Shown piece by piece: positions 15,716 to 40,729 of a DNA stretch of 64,000 bases; position 1 is the first letter of the stretch, and the number at the start of each line of letters is the position of its first letter. The translations under genes and the position numbers were made by a program. The notes beneath the pieces are model-generated. The model made no database searches, was not told where the DNA came from, and worked only from the letters and a program-made list of their open reading frames with translations. Source of the stretch: Podarcis cretensis (taxonomy: Eukaryota); the NCBI GenBank assembly GCA_951804945.1, contig OX638150.1:71982001-72046000 (forward strand). Reading direction: 5' to 3'.

Positions 15716-18132
15716 GAGAAATTTCCCTTCATTATGAGTTCTAAAACGATATCAGGATTGATAAGGGGGAGGGGAGCTATGCTACTTATAAGCATGCAGC
15801 GCAACAGCTGCTCTGTGTCAGGAAATGGTTTTGGCCATCCTCAGGCATGGATGAGTTAGCTGGAAATGTCATCGGAGTTAATGGGGAAAGATCATGGCCT
15901 CTCGGATGCTGTTAAAGAAGAGAAAGGACATACTATTCACTAAACTGCAGTGTCCCATCTGGTGGGAGAAGAGGAGGAATAGGGCTTTGGCGAATAGCAA
16001 AGTTCTGAGAGGTTCCTTGGCAAAATTTCACAGATGACATTTATGTCACTTCGTTATGGTCCAATCGTTTCCACTTATCCATCAGACATGATTATTCCTC
16101 CCACTGCCCTAGCATTCCAAAACAACACAATGCCTGATTGGCCAGCTATATTCACGTATAGTCAGCTATATTCTGACTTAAGCCAGCTGCAAATTTCATG
16201 CAGACCCCTCTACTTCCCTTGAGAAACCTGGTCCTTTCCATTGGTCATGCTAGAGTTACCAATGTATATTTTACTCTTTCCCCTTAATATCTGTATATAA
16301 ATATATCTTTGAATGTTCTCATCCTCTTGGATTCTTATATCCTTCCCTCACCACATAGACCCACCTTTTTTCACTCAACCCCAGGTTGATTTCAAGTATG
16401 GGCATCCTCTGAACTTTGTCCTGTGTGGCCATACCATCTCCCGCAGGGCCCCTCCATCTCCAGTTCAAATGGTGGCTCAAGCTCCACAGGGCTTCCCCCT
16501 ATGTGGAGGGCTGGGGTTACAAAATTTCACAGCAGGGAGATAATTAGGAGTGGTATCATTGTCCTACTGACCCTGGGCCTACTACTGGCACAACAGCTGC
16601 ACCACTCTCCCCTAAGAGTCGGTTCCAGTGCTGGCCAAAGTTCCTTCTTCCTGCAAATCCCCCAACCCCTTGATATGGCTTGGCTGCCTCTGATCTTGTC
16701 CAAGCATTAGTATCCATTTACACGACAAGCCCCAAACTTCTTAATTAATCTGAAAGCAGCTGCAGCACTGGCCTGAGACAGGCAGGAATTGTGCCCTTGT
16801 ACCAGTGGGTTCCTGTCTGAGTGCTGGACCTGATTAGCAGCTTTGCTAATGAACTTAGGTTCATTTCTGTAAGCCTTACTAATTTCTGTATAAGAGATTC
16901 AGTGCAGCGGTAGGGAAACTATGGAAGGGCACCTAACAGTTCATATGTTGTGCATGACTAATAATCTTGATCCTTTTCTCCCCTGCCTTTGATCATTATG
17001 AGGTTTCTTCTATCAATGAAAGGTCAGAGCAACAAGAAAGTGCCCCTTCTACAGAGACCCTGCTTTCCCCTTGTCGTTTCTTTTCATTCCCACTCTCCAA
17101 GAACAATTCACACAGATTCCAAGTTTGATCTCACTTACTACCAAATAGGATCACCATACCACCCGCCCCCCCAAAAAAAATTCTAGCATTTAATTAATAC
17201 ATCCTTAAATATATAGCCGTTCCATGCTGACAGCAGCTTCAGGCATGACCTGAATGAAGTCAGGAGACCAGGAAGTGCAGGTGCTTTGCCTTTTTTCTTT
17301 CCCCACATCTCTTAGCCAGTGTTACTCGATACAATAATTATTGTGCATGGACAAGAATTAGGAGATACAGTCCCCCTTTACTCTTTATTTCATGTTTTAA
17401 TTACAAATTTCTGAATTCCCCTATTAGCACCTAAAGCATCTGAGTTAGGGGCGGGGAACTTCTTTTCCTCTAACTTCTAAGTTTGTCTGTAAGAATTGTT
17501 GGTGATGCCACCAGAGTGGTATGACATGGAAAGGCTGCATGTTTCCGCAAGAGAGAAGATCAGGGAAAACAGCACAGAACAGGTTAACCCTAAACTATTT
17601 AAACTATATTAGGTGTGAAGGGCAGTTGATACACCTAGGGTCAAACTAGATGAGATGCAGGAAATCTGTGATTGGCTCTCTTGATGTTTCTTGGTGTTTG
17701 GGTGGTGGTGGTTTTTTTAAAGCAGCTGCGGGGGGGGGGGGGGCTTGAATGGAATGCGGCAGTGGCACTGGGAGAGGGATTAATCCCCCCACACATACAT
17801 GGATTTCCCAGTCTAAATCACATTTCCCCTCAAAGCTGAGAAAAAATATATATGGCTGCCTGTATACTATTTTCCCCTATCAGGCAAATAGTAGAAGTGG
17901 CTGCAGTTTAGACAAGAAAAAAGGCCTTGGTTGAATTCTCCCTTCTTTGAACACTGTGTTCAGAGGTTGTGTGTGTGAGAGAGGAAGATGGGGAGAGAAA
18001 ACTCTAATCAGAGCTTTCTTATTGAGTTTGAAAATGAAAGGACTACAGAAGGAGGGGAGTTTCTCCTTTTCCTACCCATTTAAGAGTTCTGAGCAAATGA
18101 ATGAATGAATGTTGAGGATCTAAGAGAGATAA

Positions 18133-18289
18133 TGTTAGGATATTTCCGTTCCACCTTAAAAGGGAGCAGGATGTTTGTGTCACAGCCTGCGTATTTCCTG
18201 TTCACAGAAACATCCTGTGAACAGGAAATACGCAGGCTGTGACACAAACATCCTGCTCCCTTTTAAGGTGGAACGGAAATATCCTAACA
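18133..18289. repeat. Perfect inverted repeat (75-bp arms, 7-nt loop) forming the PPT-side terminus of the Copia element
   Basis: 18133-18207 is the exact reverse complement of 18215-18289; loop aaacatc. Confidence 0.97.
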
Positions 18290-18303
18290 TCCTCCCCCTT
18301 TCC
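18290..18303 (-). other. Polypurine tract GGAAAGGGGGAGGA
   Basis: 14 purines directly before TGTTAGG on the - strand, just after the RNase H stop codon. Confidence 0.9.
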
Positions 18304-18326
18304 GTGTAACCTGTAGTACCTGTGGT

Positions 18327-21300
18327 TCAACCCAATTGCAACCTCTGTACATAAACCTTAAGTTGTTCTCTGTTAACAACCTTAGACAACAGATCAGCAG
18401 GAATTTCATTTCCTGGCATGTAGGACACCTGAATGAGTCCTTTCTGAATACACTCTCTTGCACGATGTAGCTTAATCTGCAAGTACTTGGTTCTTTGCTT
18501 GCAACTCTCTGAGTTCAGCAAAGCCAAACAGGATCTATTGTCTTGATACACTTGTATAGGACATTTCACAGACACTCTGATGTCCTTAAACAGTTGCATC
18601 AACCATTCACAATCCATGAGTGAAAATGACAGAGCATTGAGTTCTGCTTCACAGGAACTTAGGCTTACTGTCGTCTGCTTCCTGCACATCCAGTCAAACA
18701 GACCGTGGTTGTACACGTAGCATACTCCAGAAGTGCTTGTACCATCCGTGGTGTCACTTCCAAAACTAGCATCTGCAAAGATTTCAAGACCTCCAGTCTT
18801 CTGACTGGTGAACCTCAGCCTGTAGTGCAAAGTTCCTTTCAAATAGCGGGCTATGCGCTTCAGAGCTTTCCAATCCTGAACAGTAGGATTGTTGGCATGT
18901 CTGCTAAGCAGGTTAGTGCTTACAGCTATGTCAGGTCTTGAGCATCTAGCAATGAAATTCAGCTTGCCTAGAATGCATCTGTACAGCGTAGTGTCAGAAA
19001 ACGCTTCAGCAGTACTATCTACCTGGTAACCTGTCACCATCGGTGTGTCTGCTGGGTTTGCATCAACCAAATTCAACCTGGTTAATACATCAGCAGTTTT
19101 CTGTGTCTGGTGTACCAGAAAATTACCTGCTTGGTCCCTCTCCACCTGCAGAGAAAGATAGTTGGATACCTCACCAAGATCCTTCATGTCAAAGTGCTCC
19201 TTCAGCTGAGCTAGGGTGCTTTTGTACAAAGCCTGATTCTTCCAAAACATCAGAAGATCATCAACAAAACATAAACAATAGTTTGTTTTGCCCCTCCTCC
19301 TTGACAAACACACATGGATCAGCTTTGCCCTGGTGAAAACCTAGAGAAAGCAATGTCTCAGTGAGTTTTGTGTTCCAACACCTGGCACTCTGCTTGAGAC
19401 CATATAAGGATTTCCGCAGTTTACAGACCATTCCCTTCTGTATCTGCATTCCATCAGGTGGAAGCATAAACAGCTCCTCTCCCAAAACCCCGTACAAAAA
19501 AACTGTATTAATGTCATGTTGGGAAACATGCAGTTTCTCCTCTGCAGCAATCTTGAGCATCAGCCGAATGCTCTCATACTTGACAGTGGGTGAGTAGGTC
19601 TCGTGGTAATCCTGTCCTGGTACCTGAGAAAAACCTCTGGCAACCAATCTGGCTTTGTGTCTGACAACTTTGCCATTCTGGTCTGTCTTGGCCTTGAAGA
19701 CCCATTTGCTGCCAACCAGTCTCATTCCTGGGACTACCGGTACCAGTTCCCAAGTTTGGTTCCTTTTCAAGGAATCAACTTCAGCCTTCATGGCATTAAG
19801 CCAAGGCTCAGCATCTTTAGAGGTTAACTCCTGAACCTCTTTGAAGCTTGAAGGTTCCCACACCTTCTCTGAGCTACTAAGAACAGCAGTTGCCATCTTA
19901 GCAAACTCATCAGCAAATCTCTTTGGAGGTCTGCCTTTCGTGGCCCTTTCAGATCTGTGAACTAGACGCAAGTCTTCTGCACTCATCTCCTCCTTCTTAG
20001 GAGAAAAGTGACCAATGGTGAACAGTGGTTCTTCCAGTTCATTGTCAGATGCATCAGACGGTCTGACTGAGGCCTTTGCGCTCTTGTAGTCTGCTGTGTC
20101 ATCACTGTCACTGACACCAGCAGCAGCGCTGCCCACTGAGCTGGAATCCGAACTCTGATCATCATCATCATCATCCTCAGCTTCCTCTTCTGCCTCAACA
20201 CCATCTGCTTTTTTCACATCACCTTCATCCTCCTCTGGGTAACTCTGGAAAATTCCCACATTTCCCCCCCACCTGGGATTGTACTCAACACTCTTTGTGA
20301 ACTTAATGGACTTAGAGTCAGTCATTCATACCCTGTATGAACCTTTTTCGTACCCCATGAACAAACCATGTGCCCCACGCTTCCCAAGCTTGTTGCTCTG
20401 TGGGGTGTGTACCCACATGTCAGAACCAAAGATTCTCATGTGTTTGACGTAAGGTTTCTTACCAAACATCTTCTCATAGGGAGTACAACCAATAGGTGAT
20501 GACAATCTGCGATTATAAGTGTAAACAAACGTTGACAAAGCCTCCCCCCAATACTTCTCAGGGAGATTGGCATCATGCAACAAGGTTTTCATGCCTTGAA
20601 GCAATGTTTGCTTTGCTTGCTCACAAACCTCCCATGTGGGATCCAGGACTTGAGAGGCTATGCTGGATTCCGTTCTCAGTCAGGAAAGCTTCAAACTGCT
20701 GAGAAGTGAATTCAGCCTCTCGATTAGTAAACAAACAGTCAATGCGTTTACTGTGAACATTCTCCAACCAAGCACAGAATGCCTTGAACCTAGGAAATGC
20801 GTCCGATTTCTGCTGGAGGATAAACCCATGAATGTACCTGGAAAAGGAATCAATTAGAACCATGAAGTACCTTGCTCCACCCACAGAGGGCGCAAGTGGA
20901 CCAACCAGGTTTGCGTGGACTAGCTGGTAGGGTTTGGAAGCCTGCCTGCTAGACTCCTTGCCTTTTGGAGCAACCTTCACCTTGTTCTCTGCACAAGATA
21001 CACATTTCATGTGAAACTTACAGGGTTTGATGTTCAAACCCTGAACCAAATCAGGCATCTTGGCCAGCGCCTGCCAAGACATGTGACAAAATCTTCGATG
21101 TGCCTCATGAATACATCCTGCATGAAGAACTTTGTTAGTTTGTGCAACACAACAAGAATCAACATTAGACACAGCAACAGCACCATTGTCATCATAAGTT
21201 ATACAGAACAAACCATCTAGAAACTTTGCATGCAAAATGTCCTCTTTGCCTTTCCTGATGACACAGACGCTCCTCTTGAAGGAAATCTCAAAGCCACGCC

Positions 21301-22247
21301 CAGTCAGCTGTGGGACACTGAGCAAATTGTCTGCAGCACCTGGAACATAAAGTACATCTTTGATGGTTGTGTGCAGACTTGCCAGTTTCACAGTCCCTTC
21401 TCCTGCGATTTGCAACGACTTTCCATCAGCCTAGTGGATGTCTCAGTCTTGAGGTGTGAAGGAGATAAACAGATGCTTATCTTTTGCCAGATGGCGGGTG
21501 CATCCAGAATCTACAATAAATCTGGCCTTGGCCTTTGGAGCAGCTTTTCCAGCAAGCAAAACCTTGTTTTCCACCGGCGTGGGCTTTTGCTGCTTGCCCC
21601 CCTGCTCCTGGCCATCAAACTTGCCTTCGGCTTTTGGAGAAGCAGTGCCAGCAAACAAAGCCTTGTTTTCCACTGGCGTGGGCTTTTCACCCCCCCCCCT
21701 TCTGCCTCGGGCCATCTGCAGGCATCTGTCTCTGTTTACTTCTGGCCTTCCGGTATCTGTGAGGATGACCTTGGCTCCCATGAGAAACAGAGCTCTCAGC
21801 TGCCGACTCCTTGGCTCCCCCTGGAGGCTGGAATGCTGCCTGGGATGACATCACAGTCAGCTCCCCCTGCAGCTTGCAACCGGTGCCCTCAGCATCCCTG
21901 CATTCACTCGCATTATGGGAAACAGCCAGGACCTCCGATGCAGTCAAACTCTGGGCTGGGATGACTGGCAGATGGGCTATCTTCAAAGCATTCCACATCT
22001 GACGTGCAGTTGTGTTGCCAGCTAGCATAGCAATTTCCTCCAGAGAGACGGACAAGACTATTACGTCTATGGCCCTTGAATCTTGGGCCCTCCATCTATC
22101 TGTCAGAGGAACTGGAGGGGCTTCACACACAGTATGCCACACTCCAAACTGTTGTAGTAGACTTTCACACCATTTTGCCCAGGTCTCATAATTGTGCCGA
22201 TTTAACTTTGGGCACTGAGCAGCTTCAGAAGCTTGGAAAAACTCCAT
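18327..22247 (-). pseudogene. Copia gag-pol polyprotein broken by about 3 frameshifts and 3 in-frame stops
   Basis: Consecutive ORF fragments 21687..22247, 21443..21781, 20621..21415, 20326..20604, 19261..20325, 18327..19313. Confidence 0.93.
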
Positions 22248-22447
22248 TCCAGCTCTTTACTTGAGCCTCGAGTCTTTTTTACTTCAGAGACTCCTTATCT
22301 CGGCAGCTCATAAATCTTGCGGCCTGCCATGCTCGACTCCCAGGCCAATTAAGCCAGCCGGACATCAAAGAGACTCTGCCGCGGCAATTTTTCCACATAC
22401 CTTACAGCAGTGTTTTGCAGTCTTACTCTCCTGTAAGTGCTGTGAAT

Positions 22448-22461
22448 CTGAGCCTGAAACC
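22448..22461 (-). other. Putative degenerate primer-binding site GGTTTCAGGCTCAG
   Basis: 3 nt after ...CCCAACA; 10/14 match to the copia half-tRNAiMet PBS GGTTATGGGCCCAG. Confidence 0.55.
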
Positions 22462-22464
22462 TGT

Positions 22465-22531
22465 TGTTGGGATACTGCCAGGGAGACATCAGGGTCATGA
22501 TGGCCTTTGTCTCCCTGGCAGTATCCCAACA
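22465..22531. repeat. Perfect inverted repeat (24-bp arms, 19-nt loop) forming the PBS-side terminus of the Copia element
   Basis: TGTTGGGATACTGCCAGGGAGACA (22465-22488) and its exact reverse complement (22508-22531). Confidence 0.96.
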
Positions 22532-22898
22532 GATAATGGTTCCAGTTTCATAGTCTGGCAATACTGTCTGTGCCATCCATGCCCAAAATAAAACTTTGCA
22601 TTCTTTTCTCACATGGAGATGTACAACCCCCTGGTGCACAACTTTTTTTTGGGGGGGGGGTGGATAAAGGTGGGAAAAGAAGAAGGTTGAGGTACTTGTC
22701 TTCACATCATTGTTCAAAGTGCCAGTGAGTAGCTTCCCTGTTTCTGTAGGTATCATTTAAGAAATGAACCATTCCAGGCATTTCATATATTTCCCCCCAT
22801 CCCTCTCTTTCACAGAACCAGTGGGGTGAGTGGTTGGGAATCCTGCCTCAACAAAACTCTCAATTAATTTCCTTCCCCCTATCCTCTGTTGCCCACAG

Positions 22899-40191: not shown

Positions 40192-40729
40192 GTAATTCAC
40201 TGCACAGTCTACGAAAGACATGATCACTTGCTGTTCATGAAGCACATGGCTTGGGAATGGGTGTGGTGTAGTAGTGAAGAGTGTGAGCAGAGAAGTTCCT
40301 TGTTCATATTTCACTCTCAGCTGCAGAACGTGTTTGTGGTCTTAGGCCGACCGTTATTCTCTGAGGCTCAGCCCTGTCAGATGCAGTACAGAGCTAATAA
40401 TTCTGGGCTCCTTTGAAAGGAAGGGTGGGCTAGAAGTTCAATAAGAGGAAATAAATAAATACCTTCCTGTAGTGTTGCAAGGATTGTTAGGATAAAATAC
40501 ATCTACCTAAATGCTAAGATTTAATTGAAGATGGTGATAGAATTGCTCTCACAGGATTGTCACACCACCCCAGCTCCTCAGATGAAAGTGTTTTGTCTTG
40601 TAAAATGGTGTTGTCCACTGCAATTCTTAAGTCTTTCCTTTGTGCTCTCTTTAAACTACTCCCAAAGACCTTGGGAGGGCAGCCACCCTCTTAGACCGGA
40701 TTAATTGCCATAATGTGGTTTCCTCATAG

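What the first reader, a model, noticed from the sequence alone, without database searches (positions are those of the whole stretch)
18128..22536. Copia retrotransposon with two fold-back hairpin ends instead of LTRs
Seen: a full gag-PR-IN-RT-RH Copia body on the - strand, bounded by TGTTAGGATA (18133) and TATCCCAACA (22531), with a perfect 5-bp GATAA TSD. The two ends share no direct repeat beyond the ~10-bp terminal motif. The PPT side is A-loop-rc(A) with 75-bp arms; the PBS side is rc(B)-loop-B with 24-bp arms. Established: Copia elements are A..B-PBS-body-PPT-A..B, need the shared R region for strand transfer, and integrase makes 5-bp TSDs at TG..CA ends. Inference: this equals a normal element whose interior is inverted between breakpoints inside both LTRs, with the LTR middle lost. 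Each strand then starts with the other primer's strong-stop sequence (PPT-primed U3 runs into the antisense strand, tRNA-primed U5 into the sense strand). A double U-turn template switch during reverse transcription would give exactly this, while leaving correct outer ends for integrase. Alternatives are a post-insertion inversion, or a Copia lineage that natively replicates through terminal hairpins, an architecture I do not know to be described.
Basis: partly seen in the sequence, partly recalled or inferred. Interest (0 to 1): 0.92.

Follow-up and report, generated by a model that had tools for sequence, protein, structure and literature searches.

The report
Copia element with two hairpin ends
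A dead lizard Copia retrotransposon sits in the genome with a different perfect palindrome at each end instead of two long terminal repeats. It most likely records a reverse-transcription accident that integrase still managed to insert, while the rest of its family has ordinary repeats.

Summary
A 4,399-bp Copia body (gag-PR-IN-RT-RH, at least 5 frame disruptions) lies on the - strand at 18133-22531. It has TG..CA ends and a perfect GATAA target duplication. A related species carries the precise empty site with a single GATAA.

The PPT side ends in a 157-bp palindrome (75-nt perfect arms). The PBS side ends in an unrelated 67-bp palindrome (24-nt perfect arms). The two ends share only the 10-nt terminal motif.

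Reads from several related lizards show a high-copy family, roughly 200-fold or more over flank depth. In its other copies the LTR start runs on into a common LTR interior, and the LTR end is preceded by one. The family therefore has ordinary LTRs, and this copy is the exception.

Loop orientation shows that each strand of this copy begins exactly at a primer/DNA junction of the wrong polarity and turns back within 40-86 nt.

My best reading (about 0.6) is a one-off product of two U-turn template switches during reverse transcription. It stayed integration-competent because the LTR's own 10-bp inverted termini (9/10 identical) make the swapped ends look normal.

A hairpin-replicating lineage is not supported. 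No individual second copy could be fetched, so rare sister copies are not excluded.

The parts
18128..18132 (.). Target-site duplication, left copy (GATAA)
   Evidence: The empty-site contig of organism C has a single copy (joint 18126->22531, 8 shared letters).
18133..18207 (-). Outer arm of the 157-bp palindrome at the element's 3' (PPT) end. It is an inverted copy of the first about 71-75 nt of the family LTR.
   Evidence: I1; 152/157 self-complementary. An organism G contig joins the flank to its first 26 nt (record 1).
18208..18214 (-). 7-nt loop of the PPT-side palindrome. It is contiguous with the inner arm in normal copies.
   Evidence: reads of normal copies match from the body through the inner arm and loop down to 18204, then diverge into a common sequence (153 reads in X24, 9 contigs in X3).
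18215..18289 (-). Inner arm, the native LTR start (U3 start), directly after the PPT
   Evidence: Depth is about 300-435x against about 1.8x in the flank in X24.
18290..18303 (-). Polypurine tract (14 purines) abutting the TG of the LTR start
18327..19313 (-). ORF piece: C-terminal part of RVT_2 plus an RNase H-like tail
   Evidence: RVT_2 E 6.6e-11. (aligns over 327 aa to the C-termini of Copia polyproteins).
19261..20325 (-). ORF piece: linker plus N-terminal part of RVT_2 reverse transcriptase
   Evidence: E 2.1e-50
20326..20604 (-). ORF piece: integrase C-terminal SH3-like domain
   Evidence: E 7.7e-12
20621..21415 (-). ORF piece: end of the protease-like beta-barrel, GAG-pre-integrase domain and integrase core
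   Evidence: rve E 7.9e-10; Pol_BBD 3.1e-07
21443..21781 (-). ORF piece: gag-PR linker with a 99-bp tandem duplication, and the start of the protease-like barrel
   Evidence: (D1: 21518-21588 / 21617-21687, 82%)
21687..22247 (-). ORF piece: Copia-type gag
   Evidence: Retrotran_gag_2 E 6.2e-09
22440..22464 (-). PBS-position sequence directly after the native LTR end. Its tRNA complement was not established.
   Evidence: Two positions (22451, 22455) differ from essentially all family reads (table 3).
22465..22488 (-). Inner arm of the 67-bp palindrome, the last 24 nt of the native LTR, contiguous with the PBS position
   Evidence: I2
22489..22507 (+). 19-nt loop. Its 16 nt at 22492-22507 are native LTR sequence contiguous with the OUTER arm. 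The 3 nt at 22489-22491 are not explained by the family consensus.
   Evidence: loose ends 'before 22492' with a common sequence (170 reads X24, 115 X22, 19 contigs X15)
22508..22531 (+). Outer arm. Together with the loop it is the native last 40 nt of the LTR, inverted relative to the body.
   Evidence: record 8 of X15: 22508-22800 with 0 differences; random flanks 'behind 22531' in 165 reads
22532..22536 (.). Target-site duplication, right copy (GATAA)

Best explanation
This is a single, dead-on-arrival insertion made from a Copia family that normally has ordinary LTRs. During reverse transcription the two canonical strand transfers were replaced by two local U-turns. The antisense strand began as PPT-primed plus-strand DNA (LTR nt 1 to about 75). 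It switched at a native 4-nt inverted repeat (ACAG ... CTGT, 7 nt apart) onto a sense-polarity template and ran back through the LTR start, the PPT and the whole body. The sense strand began as tRNA-primed minus-strand DNA (the last 40 nt of the LTR, read backwards), turned back, and continued through the last 24 nt of the LTR, the PBS and the body. Run-off at the two 5' ends, which are the primer/DNA junctions, gave a blunt linear DNA whose tips are the inverted LTR end and the inverted LTR start. The LTR carries a 10-bp terminal inverted repeat that is 9/10 identical, so these swapped tips still read TGTT.GGATA...TATCC.AACA. The Copia integrase accepted them and made its usual 5-bp duplication. 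Shown here: the architecture, the exact tips, the TSD, the empty site, the loop orientations, and normal LTR continuity in the other copies. Inferred: the order of events, the templates used, and that reverse transcriptase rather than a host polymerase made the turns.
For: (1) The insertion is precise, with TG..CA ends and a 5-bp TSD, and the empty site has one GATAA in organism C and in one read of organism K. That is an integrase signature. Ty1 integrase needs little more than TG..CA termini to make 5-bp duplications (PMC2939329). (2) Each palindrome's outer tip coincides to the base with the LTR start or the LTR end, i.e. with the 5' ends of PPT-primed and tRNA-primed DNA, as run-off synthesis predicts. 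(3) Both turns are local in LTR coordinates: 75 against 86 nt from the LTR start, and 24 against 40 nt from the LTR end. A strand folding back on a short strong-stop DNA predicts this. Breaks in two LTRs 4.2 kb apart do not. (4) The right-hand turn uses a 4-nt inverted microhomology present in normal copies, whose reads match to 18204. (5) Other copies continue from the LTR start into a common interior and have a common interior before the last 40 nt. Random flanks lie outside both tips (loose ends at 18204, 18252, 22492, 18289 and 22531). (6) Self-priming of strong-stop DNA by reverse transcriptase is an established in-vitro side reaction (PMC6088434). Reverse-transcription errors produce integrated proviruses with asymmetric LTRs and inversions (PMC9278108). 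(7) Both palindromes and the TSD are perfect, as expected if they were created at insertion.
Against: No intermediate was observed and no second copy could be inspected one by one. The left junction shows no microhomology and carries 3 unexplained nt; the family consensus there is only 0.6-0.66 consistent. The model needs two rare events in one particle and a second template (the co-packaged RNA). The body has at least 5 frame disruptions and at least about 20 positions where it differs from nearly all family reads. So either the template was already defective or the insertion is not very young, and in the second case perfect 75-nt arms are only moderately likely. No read spanning either loop was inspected, so the assembly of the loops rests on the window alone.
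Confidence: 0.6

Rival explanations
1. Post-insertion DNA rearrangement. A normal element inserted in + orientation. Later its interior, from 24 nt before the end of the 5' LTR to 86 nt into the 3' LTR, was inverted by two template switches or two breaks (MMBIR / MMEJ type), and both LTR middles were lost.
For: The outer tips are exactly those of a + oriented normal element: LTR start at 18133 and LTR end at 22531, with an intact TSD. There is a 4-nt microhomology at one junction and a 3-nt filler at the other, as is typical of replicative or end-joining repair. The body carries many private changes, which is compatible with a long residence time.
Against: It needs four breakpoints whose LTR coordinates pair up by coincidence (75 against 86; 24 against 40 from the end) although the two LTRs lie 4.2 kb apart. 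It needs loss of several hundred bp from both LTRs. It offers no reason for both junctions to be fold-back-like. Direct LTRs normally recombine to solo LTRs, not to inversions.
Confidence: 0.13
2. Recurrent or propagating class. Hairpin-ended copies are not unique, either because the native mini-hairpin in the LTR is a hot spot for the same error, or because such copies are themselves copied again.
For: The turn sits on a native inverted repeat present in many copies. One organism C contig at about single-copy depth joins the LTR start plus loop plus 8 nt of the inverted arm directly to the last 24 nt of the LTR (table 5c, 22488->18206). This suggests that rearrangements at this spot recur. 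The read data do not exclude a minority of such copies.
Against: Loose-end counts at 18204 and 18252 (153 + 143 reads) account for roughly all the depth over the inner arm (298 at 18249) once read geometry is allowed for. This copy has no U3 promoter upstream of the PBS and no R repeat, so it cannot make a normal genomic RNA. There is no second copy in the 64-kb window.
Confidence: 0.12
3. Assembly or sequencing artefact: the true locus holds an ordinary element.
For: No inspected read spans either loop. Palindromes are error-prone for some library types.
Against: Independent contigs of organism G confirm that the left flank abuts an LTR-start-type tip and the right flank an LTR-end-type tip, which is already incompatible with an ordinary - strand element. 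The junction k-mers across the loops do not exist in normal copies, so an assembler could not invent them. There are no Ns, and two different perfect palindromes lie exactly inside a perfect TSD.
Confidence: 0.05

Closest known systems
Ordinary Ty1/Copia LTR retrotransposons, including the 5.0-5.2 kb Copia copies noted elsewhere in this genome
   Same: Same coding plan (gag-PR-IN-RT-RH, RVT_2), PPT, TG..CA tips with a 10-bp inverted terminal motif, and a 5-bp TSD. The reads show that this copy's own family has normal LTR continuity.
   Different: There are no direct LTRs. The ends are two unrelated palindromes (157 bp and 67 bp), the LTR interior is absent, and there is no promoter-bearing U3 upstream of the PBS and no R repeat.
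Self-primed (snap-back) minus-strand strong-stop DNA of HIV-1 (PMC6088434 and the work cited there)
   Same: A strong-stop DNA folds back and is extended on itself, giving a hairpin whose tip is the primer/DNA junction.
   Different: That reaction is described in vitro as a dead-end product, is nucleated by the cTAR hairpin and is suppressed by nucleocapsid. Here both polarities are affected, the product was completed to full length and integrated, and one turn is better explained as a switch to another sense-polarity template than as pure self-copying.
HIV-1 proviruses with asymmetric LTRs or internal inversions arising during reverse transcription (PMC9278108; PMC12657518)
   Same: These are integrated defective proviruses whose two ends differ because of aberrant strand transfer or misalignment.
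   Different: They retain at least one complete LTR and show deletions rather than terminal palindromes. No double fold-back architecture is reported there.
Integration of non-Ty DNA by Ty1 integrase (PMC2939329)
   Same: It shows that a Copia-type integrase will insert any blunt DNA ending in TG..CA with a 5-bp duplication. That explains how an LTR-less cDNA could be inserted.
   Different: It is an experimental overexpression system with PCR fragments, not a natural retroelement product.
L1 'twin priming' inversions
   Same: A retroelement insertion carries an inverted segment created during reverse transcription and is flanked by a normal TSD.
   Different: That is target-primed non-LTR retrotransposition, with a single internal inversion junction, no terminal palindromes and no integrase.
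DIRS-like elements and Foldback/MITE-type transposons
   Same: They have inverted repeats at the ends.
   Different: DIRS elements use a tyrosine recombinase and make no TSD. Foldback elements and MITEs have the same repeat at both ends. Here an integrase is encoded, a 5-bp TSD is present, and the two ends share only 10 nt.

Membership tests
Ty1/Copia LTR retrotransposon | pol order PR-IN-RT-RH with integrase upstream of RT | tested here: met
   Pfam hits in that order on the - strand.
Ty1/Copia LTR retrotransposon | RVT_2-type reverse transcriptase and Copia-type gag | tested here: met
   RVT_2 E 2.1e-50; Retrotran_gag_2 E 6.2e-09
Ty1/Copia LTR retrotransposon | Two long terminal direct repeats (U3-R-U5) | tested here: not met
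   No direct repeat between the ends beyond about 10-15 nt. This copy is therefore a defective derivative, not a canonical member in structure.
Ty1/Copia LTR retrotransposon | TG..CA termini and a 5-bp target-site duplication | tested here: met
.
Ty1/Copia LTR retrotransposon | Polypurine tract abutting the 3' terminal repeat | tested here: met
   A 14-nt purine run at 18290-18303 (-)
Ty1/Copia LTR retrotransposon | PBS complementary to a tRNA next to the 5' terminal repeat | not tested
   No lizard tRNA set was available. There is no TGG start. A resemblance to the internal initiator-tRNA PBS of Drosophila copia is recalled from memory only.
Family with ordinary LTRs (a property of the other copies) | The LTR start continues into a shared interior, and the LTR end is preceded by a shared interior | tested here: met
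   loose ends: before 18204 (153 reads X24; 9 contigs X3), before 18252 (143/142 reads; 7 contigs X15), before 22492 (170/115 reads; 19 contigs X15). Consensus agreement is 0.54-0.88.
DIRS-like retroelement | Tyrosine recombinase instead of integrase; no TSD | tested here: not met
   An rve integrase core was found and a 5-bp TSD is present.
Foldback / MITE-type DNA transposon | The same long inverted repeat at both ends | tested here: not met
   The two ends share only the terminal about 10 nt.
Snap-back / U-turn reverse-transcription product | The palindrome tip coincides with a primer/DNA junction | tested here: met
   The tips equal the inverted LTR start (next to the PPT) and the inverted LTR end (next to the PBS position), to the base.
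Snap-back / U-turn reverse-transcription product | The turn is nucleated at a pre-existing inverted repeat or microhomology | tested here: inconclusive
   PPT side: a 4-nt ACAG/CTGT repeat present in normal copies. PBS side: none found, with 3 unexplained nt.
Snap-back / U-turn reverse-transcription product | Made by the element's RT in the particle, before integration | not testable with these tools
   It would need cDNA from particles or an in-vitro reaction.

The most novel reading that the evidence does not exclude
Hairpin-ended Copia copies form a propagating lineage, or a regular LTR-independent route of integration in which strong-stop DNAs that turn back on themselves replace both strand transfers, rather than a single accident.
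Probability: 0.04. Interest if true: 0.9.

Novelty: new variant of a known kind. Interest (0 to 1): 0.55.

Why it matters
Self-primed strong-stop DNA is treated as a dead end of reverse transcription and is known mainly from test-tube reactions. This locus looks like a genomic fossil showing that such products, of both polarities at once, can be completed and integrated in a vertebrate germ line. It also gives a concrete reason why this is possible: the short inverted termini of the LTR make an inverted end look like the other end to integrase. That turns a question into a countable one. A census of end types in high-copy LTR families of long-read assemblies would show how often aberrant cDNAs reach the genome. 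On the practical side, LTR-pair-based annotators will miss or mis-call such copies. A perfect 157-bp palindrome is also a potential fragile site and hairpin-RNA source.

Tried and rejected
**Routes to other copies that led nowhere**
- Protein route. I searched the 354-aa RT piece against the 90% clusters and the 50% representatives. I also searched a profile of a full-length homologue plus the six ORF pieces as separate rows. BLAST of the pieces against everything fetched followed. The best identity was about 50%, so no same-family lizard protein was found and no locus could be fetched.
- DNA route. Exact-pattern scans of metagenome contigs for the PPT/LTR junction and the LTR start, and of prokaryote genome contigs for the LTR end, gave 0 hits.
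- Window route. Self-BLAST of the element against the window found no other copy or solo LTR. The fifth hit of the terminal motif, at 40485, is an isolated chance match.
- Earlier scan notes by sequence were blank.

**Models rejected**
[quoted passage not shown] Both predict the opposite loop orientation on the PPT side to the one seen. The loop is contiguous with the inner arm on the sense strand.
- A hairpin-capped duplex self-primed from the 3' palindrome. It would give one arm per end or a giant dimer, not a double-stranded palindrome.
- An ordinary short LTR of about 118 bp as the source. The last 40 nt seen here are not contiguous in that organism C variant.

Full report
**What is there**

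On the - strand between 18133 and 22531 lies a 4,399-bp Copia-type element.
- It begins with TG and ends with CA.
- It is flanked on both sides by GATAA (18128-18132 and 22532-22536).
- The 4,175-bp interior gives Pfam matches in Copia order: gag, protease-like beta-barrel, GAG-pre-integrase, integrase core, integrase SH3, RVT_2.
- The last 230 residues align to the RNase H ends of Copia polyproteins.
- The reading frame is broken at least five times, by three frame changes and two in-frame stops. The copy is non-autonomous.

**The ends**

The repeat finder reports two inverted repeats and no direct repeat between the ends.
- PPT side: arms 18133-18207 and 18215-18289, 75 nt perfect, with a 7-nt loop.
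- PBS side: arms 22465-22488 and 22508-22531, 24 nt perfect, with a 19-nt loop.

A local alignment of the two ends in either orientation finds only the first about 15 nt (12 matches). That is essentially the 10-nt terminal motif, which differs at one position between the two ends. A 14-nt purine run abuts the inner arm on the 3' side.

The longest hairpin arm in an unrelated 6 kb of the window is 9 nt. Self-BLAST finds no other copy or solo LTR in the 64 kb.

**Independent support for the locus**

I laid four public runs on 17900-22800: two of raw reads and two of contigs, from four coded organisms.
- A 2,678-nt contig of organism C, at that run's single-copy depth, runs from the left flank at 18126 directly into 22531 and the right flank. 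Eight letters are shared at the joint. This is a precise empty site with one GATAA. Its flanks differ from the window by about 3%, so it comes from another species.
- One read of organism K shows the same joint.
- In organism G, whose flanks are nearly identical to the window, one contig joins the left flank to the first 26 nt of the element (an LTR-start-type tip). Another joins the last 24 nt (an LTR-end-type tip) to the right flank with no difference.

These tips are the reverse of what an ordinary - strand element would show. The unusual polarity of the ends is therefore not peculiar to this assembly. No contig or read that I could inspect spans the loops, which is a gap in the evidence.

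**What the family looks like**

In about 1x raw reads of organism K the flanks have depth about 1-2. The 3' half of the element has depth about 300-435, and parts of the 5' region only 7-100. This is a high-copy family made of several subfamilies.

The loose ends are the informative part.
- Reads that match the body, PPT and inner arm continue through the 7-nt loop to 18204. They then leave the window sequence for a common sequence (153 reads in K; 9 contigs in C with 0.88 agreement).
- A second population diverges at 18252 into a recognisably homologous but diverged LTR (143 and 142 reads; 7 contigs in G).
- On the other side, 170 and 115 reads and 19 contigs of G match 22492-22531 and are preceded by a common sequence.
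- Outside 18289 and 22531 the loose parts have no consensus (0.34). These are many different flanks.

So in other copies the LTR start continues into an LTR interior, and the LTR's last 40 nt follow one. The family has ordinary LTRs.

Earlier notes of this scan list Copia copies of 5,031-5,158 bp elsewhere in this genome. That fits this body plus two LTRs of roughly 430-490 bp, but I could not check that they belong to the same family.

**What the loop orientations say**

On the PPT side, native sequence is contiguous from the PPT through the inner arm and loop, plus 4 nt (86 nt of LTR). The outer arm is the copied, inverted part. A 4-nt inverted repeat (ACAG, 7 nt, CTGT) already exists at the turn in normal copies.

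On the PBS side, the native last 40 nt of the LTR are the outer arm plus 16 nt of the loop, in inverted orientation. Only the last 24 nt are present in direct orientation next to the PBS position. Three nt (22489-22491) are not explained by the family consensus, which is only 0.6-0.66 consistent there.

Read 5' to 3', the sense strand therefore starts as tRNA-primed minus-strand DNA would. The antisense strand starts as PPT-primed plus-strand DNA would. Each begins exactly at the primer/DNA junction, and each turns back within 40-86 nt.

**Most likely mechanism (inferred)**

1. A PPT-primed plus-strand DNA of about 75 nt switched at the native mini-hairpin onto a sense-polarity template, most simply the co-packaged second RNA. 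It then served as the minus strand for the whole body.
2. A tRNA-primed minus-strand DNA of 40 nt turned back. It continued through the last 24 nt of the LTR and the PBS, and then used that strand as template.
3. Each strand ran off the other's 5' end.
4. The resulting blunt DNA has the inverted LTR end at one tip and the inverted LTR start at the other. The LTR's 10-bp terminal inverted repeat is 9/10 identical, so these tips are almost indistinguishable from the normal ones.
5. Integrase made its normal 5-bp duplication.

Literature support:
- Ty1 integrase inserts any TG..CA-ended fragment with a 5-bp duplication (PMC2939329).
- Self-priming of strong-stop DNA is a known side reaction of reverse transcriptase. 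It is regarded as a dead end and is suppressed by nucleocapsid (PMC6088434).
- Integrated HIV-1 proviruses with asymmetric LTRs and inversions are ascribed to reverse-transcription errors (PMC9278108; PMC12657518).

I found no description of an integrated element with fold-back ends on both sides. The library is not exhaustive.

**Rivals**

- Post-insertion inversion. It fits the outer tips and the TSD. But it needs four breakpoints whose LTR coordinates pair up (75/86 and 24/40) although the LTRs are 4.2 kb apart, plus loss of both LTR interiors. I give it 0.13.
- Recurrent or propagating class. It cannot be excluded for a minority of copies. One organism C contig at about single-copy depth joins the LTR start plus loop plus 8 nt of inverted arm to the last 24 nt of the LTR, so this spot may be rearrangement-prone. 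However, the bulk of the reads are accounted for by normal LTRs, and this copy has no promoter-bearing U3 upstream of its PBS and no R. I give it 0.12, of which true hairpin replication is about 0.04.
- Assembly artefact. It is unlikely because loop-spanning k-mers do not exist in normal copies and the flank/tip junctions are independently confirmed. I give it 0.05.

**Age**

The site is empty in organism C and in at least one chromosome of organism K, and filled in organism G. Both palindromes and the TSD are perfect.

The body differs from essentially all family reads at about 20 or more well-supported positions, and at least one frame change is private to it. Either a defective RNA was packaged in trans, or some time has passed since insertion. 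At about 0.5-1% divergence, about 200 nt of perfect arms would still occur with a probability of about 0.15-0.4.

**Limits**

- No same-family sequence could be fetched through proteins or pattern scans.
- The window has no N.
ORF pieces were searched separately or as separate alignment rows.

**Verdict**

It is a new structural variant of a known kind of element, of moderate to good interest as a natural record of an otherwise test-tube phenomenon.

Noticed in passing
window 21518-21588 and 21617-21687: A 99-bp-period tandem duplication (71 nt aligned, 82% identity) lies in the gag-protease linker, next to a poly-C run at about 21690-21699 whose length varies among family reads.
   Followed up: partly
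window 20524-20851, 21344-21507, 22000-22327: Read depth drops 5- to 50-fold in these segments relative to the rest of the body. Strong loose-end clusters lie at 20660 and 20713. This copy appears to be a mosaic of a common 3' half and rarer subfamily segments in integrase, protease and the 5' leader/gag start.
   Followed up: partly
organism C contig laid on window 22488 -> 18206 (table 5c): A contig at about single-copy depth joins the last 24 nt of the LTR to the LTR start region through 10 extra letters. This gives an LTR-like unit of only about 118 bp that contains an 8-bp stem at the same place where this element turns back. It may be a second, different rearrangement at the same hairpin.
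   Followed up: no
window 18290-22464 (- strand, all three frames): No CCHC zinc-knuckle motif is present in any frame of the interior, and Pfam finds none, although many distant Copia relatives carry one. This matters because nucleocapsid activity is what suppresses self-priming in retroviruses.
   Followed up: partly
window 22440-22464 (- strand): The sequence at the PBS position does not start with TGG. In its family-consensus form it resembles, from memory only, the internal initiator-tRNA-complementary PBS of Drosophila copia (half-tRNA priming). This was not tested.
   Followed up: no
organism G contigs on window 17900-18158 and 22508-22800 (table 8): The contig carrying the left flank/element junction has about half the k-mer depth (27) of the contig carrying the right junction plus 1.5 kb of flank (58). 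This would fit a heterozygous insertion in that individual, or may only be noise.
   Followed up: no
window 40485-40494: There is an isolated fifth occurrence of the 10-nt terminal motif with no LTR-like context. I take it as a chance match.
   Followed up: yes
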